The notes beneath the pieces are model-generated. The model had not been told where the DNA came from, made no database searches, and worked only from the letters and a program-made list of their open reading frames with translations. Below are positions 1 to 45,912 of a stretch of 64,000 nucleotides of DNA, piece after piece. Where the stretch lies: positions 1 through 64,000 of the IMG/VR virus record IMGVR_UViG_3300046170_000519; one strand, given 5' to 3'. Position 1 is the first letter of the stretch; the number at the start of each line of letters is the position of its first letter. The translations under genes were made by a program, and so were the position numbers.

Positions 1-349
1 CCCCGAATTTCGCCATAGCAGAATCCGTAGTTTCCATAACCACCTGGATATCTTTTAGAGACTTCTCGACTTCTGCCGCTGATTGAACTATATTAAAAAA
101 GGCATCAGATATTCCATTGATTACCCCCACTGCCGCACCAAAAGCAAATACTCTTGCAGCAGATGCGTCCATAGATTTTTGAAATTCTGAAGCTGAATTA
201 GTTATTTTTCCTAAAGGTTGAACTATTCCAGCTGGATTAAGAGTTGGAGACATGCGCATGCGATTAACTACCCTCTGAGCAGCAGCAGCTTCAGCAACAA
301 TACTTTCCCTATATCCGCTTGCGGATGTTGGTATATTTACAACACTCAT
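1..349 (-). CDS. Tail tape measure protein, N-terminal part (runs off the window start)
   Basis: Translated by hand from ATG at 349: MSVVNIPTSASGYRESIVAEAAAAQRVVNRMR...SASEFQKSMDASAARVFAFGAAVGVINGIS...AEVEKSLKDIQVV. Ala-rich helical sequence typical of tape measure N-termini; lies downstream of the tail tube and chaperone genes. Confidence 0.8.
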   Translation of the reverse strand, partial: MSVVNIPTSASGYRESIVAEAAAAQRVVNRMRMSPTLNPAGIVQPLGKITNSASEFQKSMDASAARVFAFGAAVGVINGISDAFFNIVQSAAEVEKSLKDIQVVMETTDSAMAKFG

Positions 350-5353: not shown

Positions 5354-5800
5354 TTAACTCCTCCTTTTTAATAGTATATTATAATAATTGACGGAAAAAA
5401 TTCCTGATTTAGCTGCATCGGAAGATACATTAAATAATTCTCCATCAACTTCTATATCTGTTGCTTGTTTGATTAAATTATAACCTTGCAAATTAACTTT
5501 TATTCTTATATGGTCTGAAGGAATATCAATTCCAAGAATTTCATTCTCACTATTTTGCCTTAAAAATTCAAAATTCCCAGCATAAGCTATTCTAGCTTTT
5601 ATTTTTATTTCTTCAACTGTTTTACTATTTCCTTTTTCATTTTTAATTCTTGAATATAAGGCATTATAAGTATTATTTGTTGCAATAAAGATCTTTTTTT
5701 CTTTTTTAAATATTGTAATTTCTCTAGCAAAAGTATCATGTATATCATCAAATACTTTATCGTATTTATTCTTATCAGAGTTGGGTATTAAATTTGTCAT
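5354..5800 (-). CDS. Probable head-closure protein (148 aa)
   Basis: ATG at 5800 overlaps the stop of the upstream gene (TAATG coupling); small beta-rich ORF in the stopper position. Confidence 0.45.
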   Translation of the reverse strand: MTNLIPNSDKNKYDKVFDDIHDTFAREITIFKKEKKIFIATNNTYNALYSRIKNEKGNSKTVEEIKIKARIAYAGNFEFLRQNSENEILGIDIPSDHIRIKVNLQGYNLIKQATDIEVDGELFNVSSDAAKSGIFSVNYYNILLKRRS

Positions 5801-8757
5801 TATGTGTAGCAAGGTATAGTCATTTCACAAACCCCAGAAACAATTTTGCAACTAAAGCAAGTTGTAGAGCATGTGCATGCGCAGCACTCACTGCAAGTAT
5901 CAAATTTATCCGAAGATGTAAGTTCGCTATGTCTTGTAACGAACCCGCTGTTATATTCATTTTGATTTTTGAAATTAAAAGCTGAACCTCCGCAGTCTGC
6001 TGCAGAATTAGCCCCGCACAGTTCTGCATTTACGGTAATATCGTTTAAACTATAGCATCTTCCATTAATATAAACTCCATTGGAAGGAAGTTCTCCTTCC
6101 CCTAAAGCTATATAGAATTTCTCCAATTCACTGACTGTTGAAGGACATCTTGACGCATCATTACAGGGGTTATCTTTATATTCGTCAATATCACATAATG
6201 TGTATTCAGCGCACGTACCATAACCGCATGTAGTTTCTGTTGGCGATGATGTATATGTTGGAGGAATATATTCTTGAACTAAATCGAACAAGTTGGGGTC
6301 TGTATTTGCTAATACAACATCGTAACATTGCCCGCCTACATCAATAAAAATTATATGATTATTTTTAATTTTCTTTTTTGTCGTTACGGCGGCATTTAAG
6401 GTAAAAAATTGATTGTTTATATAATATGTTGTTGGGGTTATAGATTCATCTACGGTATCATAACAAATGTTCCAATTTTTCATTGAAACTGTGTTAAAAA
6501 AAGGATTTGTTTGAGTCAATTCTATTTCATTGTTTAACCAAGCCCCATTAACAGTTTCAGTATTAATTACATCTGACACATCTTTATTACTGCAACACAC
6601 GGAATTCCCTGAAGCTACAGACTCCATTGAAAAGCTATGCGCCCCACTTGATTCAAAAAGTTTATCCATATATATGGTTTCACCTTCTAGTGATCCATTT
6701 CCCTCTATAAGCATAAAATCTTTATTATTTACTTTTAATTGTACAGAATAACTTGAAGAGTTTCCTGTAGCTCTCGGCATACACATGCTAGCTCCTACAG
6801 CATCACTATGAATATTTTTTATAGTTGTTTCATTTGAGCTTTCAGAAGATGGTATTGTTATATTAGATTGCGAGCTAATACTTTGGGTTCTAAACCCATA
6901 TTCACAACATGGACCTGCAGGAGAAAATGTAAAACTAGTTGTGATTGTTTCTGTCTGAGTATTAGTCTCTGTCTCTGTTTGAGTCTGAGTATTAGTCTCT
7001 GTCTCTGTTTGAGTCTGAGTATTAGTCTCTGTCTCTGTTTGAGTCTGAGTATTGGTTATAGTCTCTGTTTGAGTCTGAGTATTGGTTATAGTCTCTGTTT
7101 GAGTCTCAGTATTAGTAGATGTCTCTGTTTGAGTCTCAGTGTTGGTAGATGTCTCTGTTTGAGTCTCAGTGTTGGTAGATGTATCTGTTTGAGTCTCAGT
7201 GTTGGTAGATGTATCTGTTTGAGTCTCAGTATTAGTAGATGTCTCTGTTTGAGTCTCAGTGTTGGTAGATGTATCTGTTTGAGTCTGAGTATTGGTTATA
7301 GTCTCTGTTTGAGTCTCAGTGTTGGTAGATGTATCTGTTTGAGTCTGAGTATTGGTTATAGTCTCTGTTTGAGTCTCAGTATTGGTTATAGTCTCTGTTT
7401 GAGTCTCAGTGTTGGTAGATGTATCTGTTTGAGTCTCAGTGTTAGTAGATGTCTCTGTTTGAGTCTCAGTGTTGGTAGATGTATCTGTTTGAGTCTGAGT
7501 ATTGGTTATAGTCTCTGTTTGAGTCTCAGTATTGGTTATAGTCTCTGTTTGAGTCTCAGTGTTGGTAGATGTATCTGTTTGAGTCTCAGTGTTGGTAGAT
7601 GTCTCTGTTTGAGTCTCAGTGTTGGTAGATGTATCTGTTTGAGTCTGAGTATTGGTTATAGTCTCTGTTTGAGTCTCAGTGTTGGTAGATGTATCTGTTT
7701 GAGTCTCAGTATTGGTTATAGTCTCTGTTTGAGTCTCAGTATTAGTAGATGTACCTGTTTGAGTCTCAGTATTGGTTATAGTCTCTGTTTGAGTCTCAGT
7801 GTTGGTAGATGTATCTGTTTGAGTCTCAGTGTTGGTAGATGTATCTGTTTGAGTCTCAGTGTTGGTAGATGTATCTGTTTGAGTCTCAGTATTAGTAGAT
7901 GTATCTGTTTGAGTCTCAGTATTGGTTATAGTCTCTGTTTGAGTCTCAGTATTAGTAGATGTATCTGTTTGAGTCTCAGTATTAGTAGATGTACCTGTTT
8001 GAGTCTCAGTATTGGTTATAGTCTCTGTTTGAGTCTCAGTATTAGTAGATGTATCTGTTTCGGTTTCAGTGTTGGTTTTAACTACAGTTTTTTTTTCCGT
8101 CTCAGTTATCGTTGGAGTGTGACCCTCGTGACACTCATGAGTTTTTGTTGGAGTATAAAATACTGTTTCTGTTTGAGTTTTTGTATAACATTTATATTCT
8201 TCAGTTTCGCATCCATGTTTGTTATTTAAACAAGAAGCTTTTCCTGAAAAACCTTCTTCAAGAACTTGTCTAGGTAAAGATTTATATATATTATAATATT
8301 GAACAAACTCTTTTATTTTTACGTCAGCTTCTGCAGATATGCTTTTATAAGCTTGAGCTGCTTGAATTTTTTGTTGAGGCGTTGAAATTAATGACTGTCT
8401 TTTTATCTGAGAATCTCCTTCTCTCAGTTCAATCCAATCAGACATTGAAAAAGATGATTCGCCAGTACTGACATCGCTTTCTGTAACATTCTTAAGTACA
8501 GCTTGACTTTTTCGCTTATAATATTCTTTTAAATATAACTGAATAAATATAGCTATTTCTTCTGGACCTAACCTAGGACAAACATCAAGGTTTTCAGTAA
8601 CCCGATATTCTGAATGTATTAATATATTAAGCTGGCCTATATTCGTCTCAAGCCAAGCAGAAATAGAGTTGATTAAGTTTTTTCCACCATCTTTAGATGA
8701 ATCGTCATAAAACTCTGTAGAATATATTTTTCGAGCGATATCATGAATTTGACTCAT
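5800..8757 (-). CDS. Putative head-tail adaptor fused to a Thr-rich repeat stalk and a Cys-rich C-terminal domain (985 aa)
   Basis: About 230-aa N-terminal region in the adaptor position (ELREGDSQIKR, YNIYKSLPRQV), then 37 x 10-aa T-rich repeats, then about 385 aa with 24 Cys. Confidence 0.6.
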   Translation of the reverse strand: MSQIHDIARKIYSTEFYDDSSKDGGKNLINSISAWLETNIGQLNILIHSEYRVTENLDVCPRLGPEEIAIFIQLYLKEYYKRKSQAVLKNVTESDVSTGESSFSMSDWIELREGDSQIKRQSLISTPQQKIQAAQAYKSISAEADVKIKEFVQYYNIYKSLPRQVLEEGFSGKASCLNNKHGCETEEYKCYTKTQTETVFYTPTKTHECHEGHTPTITETEKKTVVKTNTETETDTSTNTETQTETITNTETQTGTSTNTETQTDTSTNTETQTETITNTETQTDTSTNTETQTDTSTNTETQTDTSTNTETQTDTSTNTETQTETITNTETQTGTSTNTETQTETITNTETQTDTSTNTETQTETITNTQTQTDTSTNTETQTETSTNTETQTDTSTNTETQTETITNTETQTETITNTQTQTDTSTNTETQTETSTNTETQTDTSTNTETQTETITNTETQTETITNTQTQTDTSTNTETQTETITNTQTQTDTSTNTETQTETSTNTETQTDTSTNTETQTDTSTNTETQTETSTNTETQTETSTNTETQTETITNTQTQTETITNTQTQTETETNTQTQTETETNTQTQTETETNTQTETITTSFTFSPAGPCCEYGFRTQSISSQSNITIPSSESSNETTIKNIHSDAVGASMCMPRATGNSSSYSVQLKVNNKDFMLIEGNGSLEGETIYMDKLFESSGAHSFSMESVASGNSVCCSNKDVSDVINTETVNGAWLNNEIELTQTNPFFNTVSMKNWNICYDTVDESITPTTYYINNQFFTLNAAVTTKKKIKNNHIIFIDVGGQCYDVVLANTDPNLFDLVQEYIPPTYTSSPTETTCGYGTCAEYTLCDIDEYKDNPCNDASRCPSTVSELEKFYIALGEGELPSNGVYINGRCYSLNDITVNAELCGANSAADCGGSAFNFKNQNEYNSGFVTRHSELTSSDKFDTCSECCACTCSTTCFSCKIVSGVCEMTIPCYT
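6961..8070 (-). repeat. Coding tandem repeat, 37 x 30 bp (TETQTDTSTN / TETQTETITN variants)
   Basis: Units such as gttggtagatgtatctgtttgagtctcagt and attggttatagtctctgtttgagtctcagt are directly visible; 1110 bp = 37 units. Confidence 0.95.
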
Positions 8758-9250: not shown

Positions 9251-10471
9251 TTAAACTACAATACCAGTAAGAGCTCTAGAGTCAAGAACCATTCTTCCTT
9301 CCTCAATAGATCCGTAATATCCGATCTTTTGTTGGCGAACGGTGTATTGATCATCAGCAGCAAGTCTGAGTTCTTGACCTGTTTCAGAGTCAAGAGCTAC
9401 AGCTCTCATTAATGATTCTCTAGATCTATCAATACCAATAATAATTTGATCAGTAGCACTCGCAAATGCTGAGCCTCCATGACCAAAGTTTTTACTAGCT
9501 GCAGTAGCTACTGTAGCAAAAACATCATTGAATTTCTGACCATCACCAAGTTCATTCAACTCAGTAAAGGAAACTCCATAAAGCTCAGATGCCCCAGCAT
9601 TAGAATATAACTGATTACGCATCTGCTCAGTTGCAGGAATAACACCTGCGCCAGTACTTGAAACTGTTCCAGCTGTTACTGGATCTGTAGCTGTTCCACC
9701 TCTAGTATCAGCAGTCTGAGGGCTAACTGTTAATGTAGTATCAAGACCACGAGTATTGATGGGGTTGTAAGCCATAGCACGAATTTCACCCATAATTTCA
9801 GGAGAAATAAGTAAGTCTGTAACTCCACGATTTTGAGTTACTGGAGTGCCCTTATTCCAAGCTGTATTAATGCGCTTTGCATGAGTAATCAAACGATTTA
9901 CATCAGCGAGCAAGAATTGGTCAGCATTTACAGATTGAATAACATGATCTTTTTTATTTGAAGATCCACCTGAAGAAAACTCTGATTGAGCATTAGCTAA
10001 AACTCCTAAGATTAAGTTGGCAGATGTTACTTCCTGTTTAAGCATCAATTCTTGAGCTAAACGAGAAAATGTCTTGCTAACCACATCTAGACGAGAGCGA
10101 GCAGCATATCTGCGATCAAAATCCAAAGCGGTTTCCAACCTATAGGTTGTGAATTTCAATTCACTATGTGTTGGAGCAATGTTGTTTGAAGGCAATCCAC
10201 CAGGAGTATTTTGAGTATAAATCTCAATATAATCTTCATCTGTAATGTCATGGTAAAGATCCAATGGAATAGAAGGGTTATCATCCTCATTAAAAGAGAA
10301 ACTATTAAACATGTTACTCAAAGAAGGTGCGTTATTTATAACTTCAGCCAATACTGGGGAAATAAATTCAGCAGCAGCAGCTTGAGCTTCTTGAGCGACA
10401 TTTCTGTTCTTTGAAGCCATAGCTTTAATAAGCTCGACTTGTTCTTGTGTTCTTGTTAAAGTAATATTCAT
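9251..10471 (-). CDS. Major capsid protein (406 aa)
   Basis: Size, strongly biased codon use, position after protease and decoration genes, strong terminator downstream; C-terminal YTVRQQKIGYYGSIEEGRMVLD is consistent with an HK97 fold. Confidence 0.8.
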   Translation of the reverse strand: MNITLTRTQEQVELIKAMASKNRNVAQEAQAAAAEFISPVLAEVINNAPSLSNMFNSFSFNEDDNPSIPLDLYHDITDEDYIEIYTQNTPGGLPSNNIAPTHSELKFTTYRLETALDFDRRYAARSRLDVVSKTFSRLAQELMLKQEVTSANLILGVLANAQSEFSSGGSSNKKDHVIQSVNADQFLLADVNRLITHAKRINTAWNKGTPVTQNRGVTDLLISPEIMGEIRAMAYNPINTRGLDTTLTVSPQTADTRGGTATDPVTAGTVSSTGAGVIPATEQMRNQLYSNAGASELYGVSFTELNELGDGQKFNDVFATVATAASKNFGHGGSAFASATDQIIIGIDRSRESLMRAVALDSETGQELRLAADDQYTVRQQKIGYYGSIEEGRMVLDSRALTGIVV

Positions 10472-12806: not shown

Positions 12807-13382
12807 TTATCTTGTAATGTATCGGTATTTATCGTAATCATTATTTAATTCTAATAAATCGATATCATCACTAATCTTTAACATACAGAGCGAGTCTACA
12901 CTCTTAACTATACTAAAATATTTTTTTTCCAAAGTTAATTCAGATAAATACCTTTTAGCATCATGTATTAATACGATTGGGTCTACCCCCATATCTTTAG
13001 AGTATTTTATTGTGGCTAGAGCGCAAGCTATTCTAAACCTTCCATCTATTAATACAACCTCTGGTATATCTTCTGCATTGTTTATCGCTTGACTGTATGT
13101 AGGCCACAAATTTTTTCTTGCCTCATCGGTGGGGTAGCCATACGAATGGGTGGGCCCTAAATCAATATGCTCAAACTTGAATCTTTTTTCATCTTGAATT
13201 ATTTTTTCAACTTTATCCAACCATTTTCTATCAGTATCTATTGTGCGAACCTTTGCCGAAGAATTGTCGTATACAAAAACCGTACTACCTCCACATCCGT
13301 ATTCAAAGTAAGTATTAATGCTTTTTGTCGTTTCTAAAAGAAATTCAATTTCTTTTTCGTTCATTCCAACTTTCAATCGCAT
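12807..13382 (-). CDS. Class I SAM-dependent methyltransferase-like protein (191 aa)
   Basis: Motif I FEYGCGGST, acidic TIDTD, VLIDGRFR and VLIHD motifs, as in small-molecule/glycan O-methyltransferases. Confidence 0.65.
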   Translation of the reverse strand: MRLKVGMNEKEIEFLLETTKSINTYFEYGCGGSTVFVYDNSSAKVRTIDTDRKWLDKVEKIIQDEKRFKFEHIDLGPTHSYGYPTDEARKNLWPTYSQAINNAEDIPEVVLIDGRFRIACALATIKYSKDMGVDPIVLIHDAKRYLSELTLEKKYFSIVKSVDSLCMLKISDDIDLLELNNDYDKYRYITR

Positions 13383-13467
13383 TTTATTTTTTTTCTTTTG
13401 AGTTTTTTTGAGCTTTTTAAAGACTTTTCATCAGGGTAATCTTTATCTCCAGGTTTAGCTGGTTTGT
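13379..13467. repeat. Direct repeat copy A (89 bp)
   Basis: Identical to 14156-14246 except T5 vs T7 in one homopolymer; includes the start codon of the methyltransferase gene. Confidence 0.95.
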
Positions 13468-13484
13468 TAAAGGTTCTCTATGTC

Positions 13485-14159
13485 TCATACTATATCTATG
13501 TTAAAAATATTTCTCATATATTCATTAATCTCATCATTCTTAATGACATCTTTCCATTTATTTGGATTTGACTTTGCAATTGAATGATATCTACCATTAA
13601 CCTCATTAATATTCAGACTACCACCCGTGAATGATGATCCCTTGCCAATACCAGAGTTTGGCAACCCAGTAGGTACTACTTTATGTGACCAACCAAATCT
13701 ATTTTCTACCTTCATTGCATAATCACTATCTGAAACTAATTTATTATATAAAATGAACTTATTAGGGTATTTATCATATAACATACAATACTTTAAATAT
13801 ATTTCATCACACTTACCACCCCAACAAGTATCTCTATTCGATTTTATCCTAGATGCCCATATATTATACCAATCTCTAAGGATAATAATATCATTATCTA
13901 AAATATGTGTAGGTGCGACATCCTCATACGAGGAAATTAAAACATCATATTTCCCATCTGGTGGTTTCTTTAACTCAATTTTACCACCCAACCAAGTAAC
14001 ATGTTGCCCTACTTTACCATTTGTAATTGCATTTTTATGATAACCATATTCAAAATGCGAAAGTATCCATTCTATGATCATGTGATTACCTGATCTCCTC
14101 AATCCATATGTATTATACTCCACCATCTTAATAAACCCCTCTCCAACTTTCAATGGCAT
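13485..14159 (-). CDS. Sulfotransferase-like P-loop protein (224 aa)
   Basis: 5'-PSB-like YGLRRSGNH and 3'-PB-like IIILRDWYNIWAS motifs. Confidence 0.6.
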   Translation of the reverse strand: MPLKVGEGFIKMVEYNTYGLRRSGNHMIIEWILSHFEYGYHKNAITNGKVGQHVTWLGGKIELKKPPDGKYDVLISSYEDVAPTHILDNDIIILRDWYNIWASRIKSNRDTCWGGKCDEIYLKYCMLYDKYPNKFILYNKLVSDSDYAMKVENRFGWSHKVVPTGLPNSGIGKGSSFTGGSLNINEVNGRYHSIAKSNPNKWKDVIKNDEINEYMRNIFNIDIV

Positions 14160-14246
14160 TTTATTTTTTTTCTTTTGAGTTTTTTTGAGCTTTTTTTAAA
14201 GACTTTTCATCAGGGTAATCTTTATCTCCAGGTTTAGCTGGTTTGT
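14156..14246. repeat. Direct repeat copy B (91 bp)
   Basis: Covers the 3' end of ORF 14161-14745 and the ATG of the sulfotransferase-like gene. Confidence 0.95.
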
Positions 14247-14745
14247 AGTTTTTCCCCATCCTTTTTTTCTTTCTTCTAATGTTTTCCCAGAGTCCAGGTT
14301 TATTTTTCTTACCTTCTGATTCGTCCATTTCATCGAGTAAAATATCTTCAAGATCTTGTTCTGTAAATTCCTCTAAAGAACCTTCAACTTTTGAACCTCC
14401 TCGCCATTGCCTGCAAGACCAGTATCTAGCTTTCCATTTTGGCCCAGGGTTTCCGCAGTTATGCCTAGCTCTAAAAGATTTTCTTCTTGCAGGATCATCT
14501 CTTTTAATTTCCATGTTTGGATCTCCGAAGTTCACTTTTACAATATTCCCTTTGTCATTCTTTACATAAACAGAAAATTTCTTAGGCCCCTTTGGAGTTC
14601 TGAATGGCTTATTTAAAGTTTTACCTTTATTCTTTTCTTCAGCCCATATTTCCTCAGAAATCAATTCTTCACTTCCACAATCAGGACAGAATAAACTTTT
14701 AGCATTTATTATTTCAGAAAGATCTATATTTATATATTTTCTCAT
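14161..14745 (-). CDS. Basic Cys/His-motif protein, probably virion-associated (194 aa)
   Basis: Motifs KPFRTPKGPKKFSVYVKN...RKSFRARHNC...ARYWSCRQW and GLWENIRRKKKR; between portal and protease. Confidence 0.7.
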   Translation of the reverse strand: MRKYINIDLSEIINAKSLFCPDCGSEELISEEIWAEEKNKGKTLNKPFRTPKGPKKFSVYVKNDKGNIVKVNFGDPNMEIKRDDPARRKSFRARHNCGNPGPKWKARYWSCRQWRGGSKVEGSLEEFTEQDLEDILLDEMDESEGKKNKPGLWENIRRKKKRMGKNYKPAKPGDKDYPDEKSLKKAQKNSKEKK

Positions 14746-45837: not shown

Positions 45838-45912
45838 TGGACGCATGGATCAGAATCGAACTGACGAATGGGAGTTTTGCAGACTCCTGCCTTACCACTT
45901 GGCTACCATGCG
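45838..45912 (-). tRNA. trnC: tRNA-Cys (GCA)
   Basis: Cloverleaf: acceptor CGCATGG/CCATGCG, U73 plus encoded CCA, D-arm GCC-AAGTGGTAA-GGC, anticodon arm GGAGT-CTGCAAA-ACTCC, T-arm GTCAG-TTCGATT-CTGAT. Confidence 0.95.

What the first reader, a model, noticed from the sequence alone, without database searches (positions are those of the whole stretch)
5800..8757. Head-tail adaptor-position protein extended by a mucin-like Thr stalk and a Cys-rich tip
Seen: an N-terminal ~230 aa in the adaptor slot and translationally coupled (TAATG) to the head-closure gene, then 370 aa that are about half Thr with Ser/Glu/Gln/Asn, then ~385 aa with 24 Cys (ending TCSECCACTCSTTCFSCKIVSGVCEMTIPC). Established: adaptors (SPP1 gp15/HK97 gp6 class) are usually small ring proteins. 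Inference: the neck would display a collar of long flexible stalks tipped by a disulfide- or metal-stabilised binding domain, i.e. an adhesin mounted on a core structural protein. The adaptor identity rests on synteny.
Basis: partly seen in the sequence, partly recalled or inferred. Interest (0 to 1): 0.72.

Follow-up and report, generated by a model that had tools for sequence, protein, structure and literature searches.

The report
Phage neck adaptor with Thr-stalk tip
In an uncultured 206-kb seawater phage, the ring protein that joins head to tail has grown a 380-residue stalk in which every second residue is threonine, capped by a cysteine-rich domain of unknown fold, so the neck probably carries twelve tethered, possibly adhesive, tips.

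Summary
Window 5800-8757 (-) is one 985-aa ORF with four parts:
- a 166-aa N-domain;
- a 61-aa Cys/His linker;
- a perfect (Thr-X)190 stalk, residues 228-607;
- a 378-aa C-terminal region with 24 Cys.

Its TAA stop overlaps the ATG of the next gene (TAATG).

The N-domain is a head-to-tail adaptor at fold level. [quoted passage not shown] The only full-length structural matches are phage adaptors: DEV gp83, Moo19, cyanophage A4 and phage 812. No Pfam or PHROG adaptor family matches by sequence.

Of 169 family representatives, most are stand-alone proteins of 140-200 aa. In 19 syntenic viral contigs this slot holds either a short gene (179-218 aa) or a long one (594-985 aa). On the capsid-protein tree the long forms make one clade.

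The fusion is real: a relative with a 44-aa, non-repetitive stalk carries the same three parts. Only the repeat copy number is unverified.

The tip has no recognisable fold, so an adhesin role is inferred, not shown. Its last module recurs behind a ~20-kb (TX)n gene in the same genome. That genome's only two tRNAs are Thr and Cys.

Verdict: a new variant of a known kind.

The parts
8260..8757 (-). Adaptor core, residues 1-166: helices 3-15, 22-38, 40-47, 65-92 and 127-159, a beta-hairpin at 110-119, then a C-terminal arm ending in the conserved YNxY...PRQV motif
8401..8430 (-). Beta-hairpin, residues 110-119 (ELREGDSQIK), holding near-invariant G114 and D115. By analogy it is the hairpin that forms the DNA-channel tube inserted into the stopper ring.
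   Evidence: The analogy is to phage 812 gp96 (PMC12886913) and is inference.
8077..8259 (-). Linker, residues 167-227, with C176, C183, C190 and C209 plus several His. Short-form orthologues also carry 1-3 Cys directly after the PRQV arm.
6937..8076 (-). Stalk, residues 228-607: a perfect (Thr-X)190 built from 38 ten-residue units (TNTETQTETI, TNTETQTDTS and similar). It has 69 acidic and no basic residues. Copy number is uncertain.
   Evidence: Alleles of 865, 935 and 985 aa differ only here. Short-read unitigs break at 6982 and 8031.
6658..6909 (-). Tip module A, about residues 617-700. It starts with a CC pair and is beta-rich. It is conserved in all long forms and is the only module in the 278-279-aa variants.
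   Evidence: Alignment A2. Model pLDDT 77-92 over this part.
6229..6657 (-). Insertion, about residues 701-843, shared only with the 655-aa relative P0003 and poorly modelled
5803..6228 (-). Tip module B, residues 844-985, with 12 invariant Cys (CGYGxC...C...C...CY...C...CGG...CxxCCxC...). A second copy lies behind the giant (TETQ)n stalk at genome 145060-145479 (-).
   Evidence: Alignment A3. tblastn E=2e-7 and blastp E=5e-9.
5354..5800 (-). Downstream 148-aa gene, translationally coupled (TAATG), stopper/head-closure-like
   Evidence: Atlas features 0.92-0.93 to E217 gp28 collar, DUF6093 and Phage_attach, which is a lead only. No PDB sequence match.
9251..10471 (-). Putative major capsid protein (406 aa), assigned by its place in the module; two genes upstream of the adaptor and 62-79% identical across relatives
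45838..45912 (-). tRNA-Cys(GCA), one of only two tRNAs in the genome. The other is tRNA-Thr(UGU) at genome 82631-82706.

Best explanation
The gene encodes the phage's only head-to-tail adaptor, the ring protein expected to sit as twelve copies under the portal and to dock the stopper.

Its C-terminal arm has been lengthened, once in an ancestor of this clade, by three parts:
- a short Cys/His linker;
- a perfectly alternating (Thr-X)190 stalk, low in complexity, lacking a hydrophobic core and probably extended, up to about 125 nm if fully stretched;
- a 378-aa beta-rich tip with 24 Cys, made of two conserved modules and one insertion.

Because there is no second adaptor gene, every ring subunit should carry the extension. 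The neck would then display a collar of twelve tethered tips.

The most likely use is reversible first contact with host surface polymers or particles, which would raise the encounter rate before the tail engages.

**Shown:** the ORF, its regularity, the adaptor fold, the short and long orthologues, the single clade, and the shared tip module.

**Inferred:** the twelve-fold display, stalk extension or glycosylation, disulfide or metal stabilisation, and adhesion.
For: **Anatomy.**

**Adaptor fold.** The model has pLDDT 87. Among the top 50 VIA matches, the only ones covering more than 110 of 175 residues are phage adaptors:

The AFDB search hit a DUF1320 (Mu gp36 family) protein at TM 0.52/0.59.

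**Published precedent.** DEV gp83 and 812 gp96 have the same elements plus outward-facing extra domains.

**Synteny.** The slot is fixed in 19 contigs, and the next gene is stopper-like.

**One adaptor gene.** The N-domain matches the genome only once.

**Family as display platform.**
- About a fifth of representatives are longer than 230 aa (my count from the table).
- Their extra domains are binding-type: Calx-beta, LamG, InlB B-repeat and PKD.

**Single origin.** Long forms make one clade on the capsid-protein tree, support 87/87.

**Stalk conservation.** Stalks of 44-406 aa in relatives all keep the T-X register.

**Reused tip.** Module B also sits behind a giant (TX)n stalk in the same genome.

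**Distribution.** The phage occurs in 14 or more seawater runs.
Against: - No sequence-level match to any adaptor family.
- Foldseek against the PDB gave nothing with E below 1.
- The stopper identity of the neighbour is only a language-model lead.
- The tip has no fold match, and its model is mediocre at pLDDT 63.
- In P22 gp4-type adaptors the C-terminal arm is buried between portal protomers. It is unproven that a chain can exit outward from there.
- The protein has not been shown to be in virions.
- The repeat number is not verified by any spanning read.
Confidence: 0.6

Rival explanations
1. Same adaptor fusion, but the extension is structural or regulatory rather than adhesive. The tips would bind back onto the capsid, the tail or other (TX)n fibres as guy-wires or cement. 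Alternatively they would act like T4 whiskers, as assembly helpers or environmental sensors for other fibres.
For: - Module B is shared with a giant (TX)n protein of the same genome, so the tips could be a self-association or docking module.
- Phage 812 neck decoration proteins reinforce the neck, and whiskers surround its adaptor.
- The tip has no lectin-like or Ig-like fold match.
Against: - Other family members carry classical binding domains (PKD, LamG, InlB B-repeat, Calx-beta) at the same ends.
- A 380-residue tether is far longer than local cementing needs.
- Stalk length varies about nine-fold among relatives, which fits reach better than a fixed brace.
Confidence: 0.17
2. The extension is a passive hydrophilic brush, possibly glycosylated. 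It would keep virions dispersed, shield the neck, or reduce non-productive sticking or grazing. The Cys-rich end would be merely a cap.
For: - The window's stalk has 69 acidic and no basic residues.
- 12% of the genome encodes (TX)n.
- The genome holds GT2 and sugar epimerase/dehydratase genes.
Against: - Relatives' stalks are not acidic (3-15% acidic residues) yet keep the alternating Thr, so charge is not the conserved feature.
- The tip modules are conserved, with 12 invariant Cys. That argues for a specific fold and function rather than a cap.
Confidence: 0.12
3. The N-domain is not the adaptor. It is another neck- or vertex-associated protein, such as a decoration or head-fibre anchor. 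The real adaptor would be the 126-aa upstream protein or another gene.
For: - No sequence membership in adaptor families.
- Both N- and C-terminal extensions are tolerated in the family, which is unusual for a tightly packed ring protein.
Against: - All full-length structural matches are adaptors, and the model shows the canonical core, hairpin and arm.
- The near-invariant GD in the hairpin fits a channel-lining element.
- Published adaptors with outward domains exist.
- The upstream 126-aa protein is highly basic and Lys-rich, which does not suggest an adaptor core; this is my reading of the sequence and no fold was predicted for it.
Confidence: 0.08
4. Assembly artefact: two genes were joined across a collapsed or chimeric repeat.
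For: No short-read unitig spans 6982-8031. Assemblies give 865, 935 or 985 aa.
Against: - P0003 (655 aa, 68% identical N-domain) has only a 44-aa non-repetitive stalk and the same tip.
- Five other divergent long forms with different repeat units stay in frame.
- Depth is equal on both flanks (11.9 vs 11.9, 28.1 vs 27.8).
- All length variants differ by multiples of 10 residues.
Confidence: 0.03

Closest known systems
Pseudomonas phage DEV gp83 head-to-tail adaptor (N4-like; PDB 9bgm, PMC10925440)
   Different: - The DEV extra domain is a 101-aa insertion between helices, not a C-terminal stalk with a tip.
- Sequence identity is about 7%.
- DEV is a podophage. This phage probably has a long tail; a tape-measure-like ORF lies at window 2-349, which is my reading and was not tested.
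Staphylococcus phage 812 gp96 adaptor (PDB 8qje, PMC12886913)
   Different: The 812 whiskers and neck decorations are separate proteins. Here the fibre is covalently part of the adaptor, and it is about 815 aa long.
Neck fibres of long-tailed phages: T4 fibritin whiskers and the lactococcal neck passage structure (from general knowledge)
   Same: Appendages radiate from the head-tail junction and have sensing or adhesion roles.
   Different: Those are separate trimeric proteins docked on neck proteins, coiled-coil or beta-structured. None is known to be a dipeptide-repeat stalk fused to the adaptor.
Staphylococcal Ser-Asp repeat (Sdr/Clf) surface proteins (from general knowledge)
   Same: A long, strictly alternating dipeptide repeat with a hydroxyl amino acid at every second position acts as a stalk that projects a binding domain. 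In staphylococci the Ser residues are glycosylated.
   Different: They are cell-wall-anchored bacterial proteins with no sequence relation to this one, and glycosylation here is untested.
Mucin PTS domains, and glycosylated C-terminal extensions of mycobacteriophage capsid and tail proteins (from general knowledge)
   Same: Thr-rich tandem repeats or extensions on exposed virion proteins. The phage encodes glycosyltransferases.
   Different: There is no Pro in 380 residues, the T-X register is strict, and no evidence links the GT2 genes to this protein.

Membership tests
Head-to-tail adaptor (P22 gp4 / Mu gp36 / DEV gp83 / 812 gp96 kind) | [quoted passage not shown] | tested here: met
Head-to-tail adaptor (P22 gp4 / Mu gp36 / DEV gp83 / 812 gp96 kind) | Gene lies between the major capsid gene and the stopper/head-closure gene | tested here: met
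   Gene order is conserved in 19 contigs. The neighbour is stopper-like by Atlas features only.
Head-to-tail adaptor (P22 gp4 / Mu gp36 / DEV gp83 / 812 gp96 kind) | Sequence match to a curated adaptor family (PF24175 SU10_adaptor, PF07030 Mu gp36, PF20459, or any Pfam or PHROG family) | tested here: not met
   No hit for the protein or for 81 relatives. No hit of these HMMs in the genome. hhalign against Mu gp36 gave probability 0.2%.
Head-to-tail adaptor (P22 gp4 / Mu gp36 / DEV gp83 / 812 gp96 kind) | Binds the portal clip as a dodecameric ring | tested here: inconclusive
   The portal (residues 90-570) plus N-domain co-fold gave no verdict.
Head-to-tail adaptor (P22 gp4 / Mu gp36 / DEV gp83 / 812 gp96 kind) | Present in virions at the neck | not testable with these tools
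   The phage is uncultured and known only from metagenomes.
   The full Pfam scan gave no hit at E<=0.1. The core is about 166 aa. The fold-level matches are to other adaptor lineages.
Mucin-like O-glycosylated stalk | Ser/Thr-rich tandem repeats | tested here: met
   50.3% Thr in 38 ten-residue units.
Mucin-like O-glycosylated stalk | Pro-rich PTS composition | tested here: not met
   0 Pro in 380 residues. Relatives have 2-9% Pro.
Mucin-like O-glycosylated stalk | O-glycans on the Thr residues | not testable with these tools
   The only leads are two GT2 genes and two NAD epimerase/dehydratase genes in the genome. Such genes also occur in a short-form relative, so there is no clean co-occurrence.
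Neck whisker / collar fibre proteins (T4 fibritin type) | A separate trimeric fibre protein docked on neck proteins | tested here: not met
   The stalk and tip are in the same reading frame as the adaptor.

The most novel reading that the evidence does not exclude
The neck collar may be one element of a phage-encoded, possibly O-glycosylated, 'hair' system built from strictly alternating (Thr-X)n stalks with Cys-rich tips.

Several observations fit this reading:
- 12% of this 206-kb genome (25 kb, including one block of about 20 kb) encodes (TX)n.
- The genome's only two tRNAs are Thr and Cys.
- Sugar-nucleotide enzymes lie next to the giant genes.
- The same tip module is mounted both on the adaptor and on a giant fibre.

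It would be a bacteriophage counterpart of the glycosylated fibril coats of giant viruses, and the stalk would be a new kind of structural polymer.
Probability: 0.25. Interest if true: 0.85.

Novelty: new variant of a known kind. Interest (0 to 1): 0.66.

Why it matters
**For phage structure.** Adaptors are treated as compact, conserved plumbing of the phage neck. This family shows the adaptor used repeatedly as a mounting point for binding-type domains. This clade is the extreme case: a stalk and tip of about 815 residues fused to each of the twelve expected ring subunits. If the tips bind host or particle surfaces, the neck is an overlooked determinant of adsorption in abundant marine phages.

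**For protein chemistry.**
- The perfect (Thr-X)190 repeat keeps its register across relatives whose X residues differ.
- The tip domain has 12 invariant Cys and no known fold.
- Both are tractable targets, and each may be a new protein material or binding fold.

**For annotation.**
- The result gives a fold-based name to a family of at least 169 clusters of unnamed viral proteins.
- It also shows that very long low-complexity ORFs in viral contigs can be real.

Tried and rejected
**Family and sequence searches that found nothing**
- Pfam and PHROGs on the protein, its parts and nine neighbours gave nothing usable.
- The same libraries on 81 family members gave nothing.
- tblastn of the capsid protein against 50,697 phage records found no match, so there is no cultured relative.
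- The profile of the N-domain family against PDB sequences gave only chance hits.
- The neighbour profile and single proteins against PDB sequences gave nothing.
- The HMMs PF24175, PF07030 and PF20459 have no match in the genome.
- hhalign of the family against Mu gp36 and gp35 single sequences gave no signal.

**Fold searches**

**Searches for more tip relatives**
- The tip was searched in 5.8 billion proteins, alone and as an alignment. Only the same clade came back.

**Other tests**
- The portal plus N-domain co-fold gave no verdict. It is evidence neither for nor against binding.
- Laying Logan unitigs on the gene found none that spans the repeat, so copy number stays unverified.
- A test of whether glycosyl or sugar genes occur only with long forms failed. 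A short-form relative also has an epimerase, and the contigs are fragments.
- A search for a viral sulfhydryl oxidase (PF04777) found none. There is only an ordinary thioredoxin.

**Ideas considered and set aside**
- The stalk as a beta-solenoid or ice-binding array. It has too few hydrophobic residues (13 Ile in 380) to form a core.
- The stalk as a purely polyanionic brush. Relatives' stalks are not acidic.
Full report
**1. What is there**

Window 5800-8757 on the minus strand is a single 985-aa ORF. It starts 13 nt after the stop of a 126-aa gene that itself follows the 406-aa putative major capsid gene. Its TAA shares an A with the ATG of the next gene, giving TAATG. Relatives' tblastn matches to that gene begin at this ATG.

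The protein has four parts:

| Part | Residues | Features |
|---|---|---|
| N-domain | 1-166 | Folded core |
| Linker | 167-227 | Four Cys and several His |
| Stalk | 228-607 | Every odd residue is Thr (190 of 190); even positions are E, Q, N, S, D, I, G, T only |
| C-terminal region | 608-985 | 378 aa with 24 Cys |

The stalk is encoded by a 30-nt repeat with 36.9 copies. The large + strand ORF at 6868-8229 is only the antisense of the repeat.

**2. Is the fusion real?**

The genome is an IMG/VR virus record of 205,857 bp, and the window is its first 64 kb. Words from this stretch occur in at least 14 seawater DNA runs and in some metatranscriptome runs.

Short-read unitigs stop at 6982 and 8031, so none spans the array. 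Depth is the same on both flanks. Near-identical assemblies give 865, 935 and 985 aa, and they differ only inside the array by multiples of ten residues. The copy number is therefore unverified.

The architecture does not depend on this array:
- P0003 (655 aa, N-domain 68% identical) has a stalk of only 44 non-repetitive residues followed by the same tip.
- Five further relatives with quite different repeat units (TPTTTVTETATI, TLTHTSTS and others) also read through in frame.

Misassembly is rejected as an explanation of the fusion.

**3. The N-domain is an adaptor by fold, not by sequence**

Sequence searches found nothing. No Pfam or PHROG family matches the protein, its neighbours or 81 relatives.

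An exhaustive HMMER search found 169 cluster representatives, most of them 140-200 aa and matched end to end. An AF2 model on 81 of them has pLDDT 87. It shows five helices, a beta-hairpin at 110-119 that carries the near-invariant G114 and D115, and an unstructured C-terminal arm with the conserved YNxY...PRQV motif.

|---|---|---|
| Moo19 tail (9d80_B) | 8.9 | 121 |
| DEV gp83 (9bgm_b) | 8.7 | 122 |
| Cyanophage A4 (9k09_d) | 8.6 | 116 |
| Phage 812 neck (8qje_W) | 8.1 | 135 |

I take 8qje_W to be the 812 adaptor gp96. The chain range 40-302 fits the adaptor residues the paper names, but the chain label itself was not checked.

AFDB clusters add a DUF1320 protein, the Mu gp36 family. The Atlas feature search puts SU10_adaptor among the nearest named clusters.

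The published descriptions fit the model:
- DEV gp83 is a helix bundle with a C-terminal arm that inserts between portal protomers, plus an outward lectin-like domain.
- The 812 adaptor is a helical core, a beta-hairpin that forms the channel tube, and an outer beta-sandwich.

**4. Short and long forms**

Nineteen viral contigs carry a perfectly syntenic module. Its gene order is:
1. scaffold-like 531-aa gene
2. 224-aa gene
3. capsid gene
4. 126-aa gene
5. this slot
6. 148-aa gene
7. 199-aa gene
8. 292-aa gene
9. 415-aa gene

The slot holds a gene of 179-218 aa in ten contigs. In the other nine it holds a long form: six complete ORFs of 594-935 aa and three cut off by the contig end. The tip is found nowhere else in the short-form loci or contigs.

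On a capsid-protein tree the long forms make one clade (87/87) nested among short forms. That fits a single gain, although the root is only a midpoint.

Short forms already end in a few Cys and a PT-rich tail just after the PRQV arm. This suggests that the end of the arm is exposed and was the seed of the stalk.

By my count from the table, about one fifth of family representatives are longer than 230 aa. Their extra parts sit at either end:

| Position | Extra domains or repeats |
|---|---|
| N-terminal | Calx-beta, LamG |
| C-terminal | InlB B-repeat, PKD, Mtd_N-like repeats, (SGIN)n repeats |

The adaptor is thus a recurrent display platform.

**5. The stalk**

The conserved property across relatives is Thr at every second position. 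Thr makes up 36-55% of stalks that range from 44 to 406 aa. Charge is not conserved: the window's stalk is 18% acidic and others are 2-15%.

The window's stalk has only 13 Ile among its 190 X positions, no other hydrophobic residues and no Pro. A folded solenoid is therefore unlikely, and an extended or disordered thread is the default reading. Fully stretched it would be about 125 nm, taking 0.33 nm per residue (my estimate).

**6. The tip**

Alignment of the long forms shows three parts:
- Module A begins with a CC pair and is beta-rich. It is the only module in the 278-279-aa variants.
- An insertion of about 140 aa is shared only with P0003.
- Module B, the last 142 residues, has 12 invariant Cys.

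The AF2 model reaches pLDDT 77-92 in module A and in parts of module B, but only 63 overall. It matches nothing in the PDB, AFDB, BFVD or the ESM Atlas.

Disulfide bonding and metal binding cannot be told apart here. The genome has an ordinary thioredoxin and no Erv-type oxidase.

**7. Genome context**

Module B recurs at genome 145060-145479, directly behind a block of about 19.6 kb of (TETQ)n-type coding sequence (E=5e-9).

In all, 25.4 kb (12.3%) of the genome encodes (T-X) runs of 16 residues or more, all on the minus strand. ORFs of 2983 and 4049 aa carry 163 and 274 Cys. The giant block changes frame several times, which may be assembly error.

Two NAD-dependent epimerase/dehydratase genes abut this block. 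Two GT2 glycosyltransferases lie elsewhere in the genome.

The genome has exactly two tRNAs: tRNA-Cys(GCA) in the window and tRNA-Thr(UGU). A short-form relative's contig carries the same pair. The pair therefore belongs to the lineage rather than to the adaptor extension specifically.

**8. Mechanism and rivals**

The best reading is a dodecameric adaptor ring whose arms continue outward as twelve threads ending in Cys-rich tips. These would serve reversible first contact with host or particle surfaces (confidence 0.6 for the whole statement; adhesion itself about 0.45).

The rivals are:
- tips that dock onto the virion's own parts, or that act like T4 whiskers (0.17);
- a passive hydrophilic or glycosylated brush (0.12), weakened by the non-acidic stalks of relatives and by the conserved tip;
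- the N-domain is not the adaptor (0.08);
- assembly artefact (0.03).

A portal plus N-domain co-fold gave no verdict.

**9. Comparison and novelty**

Adaptors with outward accessory domains are published (DEV gp83, 812 gp96). Neck fibres are known too, as separate proteins. The literature searches here found no adaptor fused to a long dipeptide-repeat stalk and tip. I also know of no description of a (Thr-X)n stalk system in a phage.

This is a new variant of a known kind. The tip domain has no known relatives, and the genome context could make the finding considerably more interesting.

Noticed in passing
G000 (own genome) 117855-172837, minus strand, outside the window; loci L024-L026: A block of about 55 kb holds giant Thr- and Cys-rich ORFs.
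- 2983 aa with 163 Cys.
- 4049 aa with 274 Cys; its N-terminus looks LysM-like and its C-terminus has a GDSG motif (my reading, not tested).
- About 19.6 kb of nearly pure (TETQ)n, split over three frames.
- Three more ORFs of 521-946 aa with 22-38% Thr.

In total 12.3% of the genome encodes (T-X)n runs, all on one strand.
   Followed up: partly
window 45838-45912 (-) and G000 82631-82706 (-) (L027 18631-18706): The genome's only two tRNA genes are tRNA-Cys(GCA) and tRNA-Thr(UGU). These are the two residues massively over-used by the stalk and tip proteins. The same pair is present in the contig of a short-form relative (G001), while two other relatives' contigs have none.
   Followed up: partly
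G000 172910-174788 (-), 75826-76269 (+), 67541-67882 (-): Two NAD-dependent sugar epimerase/dehydratase genes lie directly next to the (TX)n gene block, and two GT2 glycosyltransferases lie elsewhere. Relatives carry an epimerase inside the head module, between the portal and scaffold genes. This is a possible virion glycosylation system, but no clean co-occurrence with the long adaptor was found.
   Followed up: partly
Proteins P0012-P0119 (metagenomic relatives): The adaptor family carries varied extra domains at either end.
- N-terminal: Calx-beta and LamG.
- C-terminal: InlB B-repeat, PKD, Mtd_N/DUF2793-like repeats, and (SGIN)n or (PSGIS)n repeats.

This marks the adaptor as a general display platform in uncultured phages.
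   Followed up: partly
window 8077-8259 (-) and the tails of short orthologues in L014-L020: One to four Cys spaced 5-7 residues apart follow the conserved PRQV arm in most family members of this lineage, including the short forms. With twelve copies in a ring they could cross-link neighbouring subunits or bind metal. This was not tested.
   Followed up: no
window 12807-14745 (-): Three ORFs without any Pfam match (191, 224 and 194 aa) sit between the portal and the scaffold-like gene. In relatives this position holds an NAD-dependent epimerase/dehydratase (L031, L032).
   Followed up: no
G005 (contig of L008, 80,842 bp): CheckV calls this relative 100% complete at 81 kb, although it is syntenic with a 206-kb genome and lacks tRNAs and giant (TX)n genes. 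Either genome size varies 2.5-fold in the lineage or the completeness estimate is wrong.
   Followed up: no
window 6868-8229 (+): A 453-aa Cys/Leu/Ser-rich ORF lies on the opposite strand of the repeat. It is an antisense artefact that gene callers may report. Similar antisense ORFs of 1263-1923 aa lie over the giant repeat block.
   Followed up: yes
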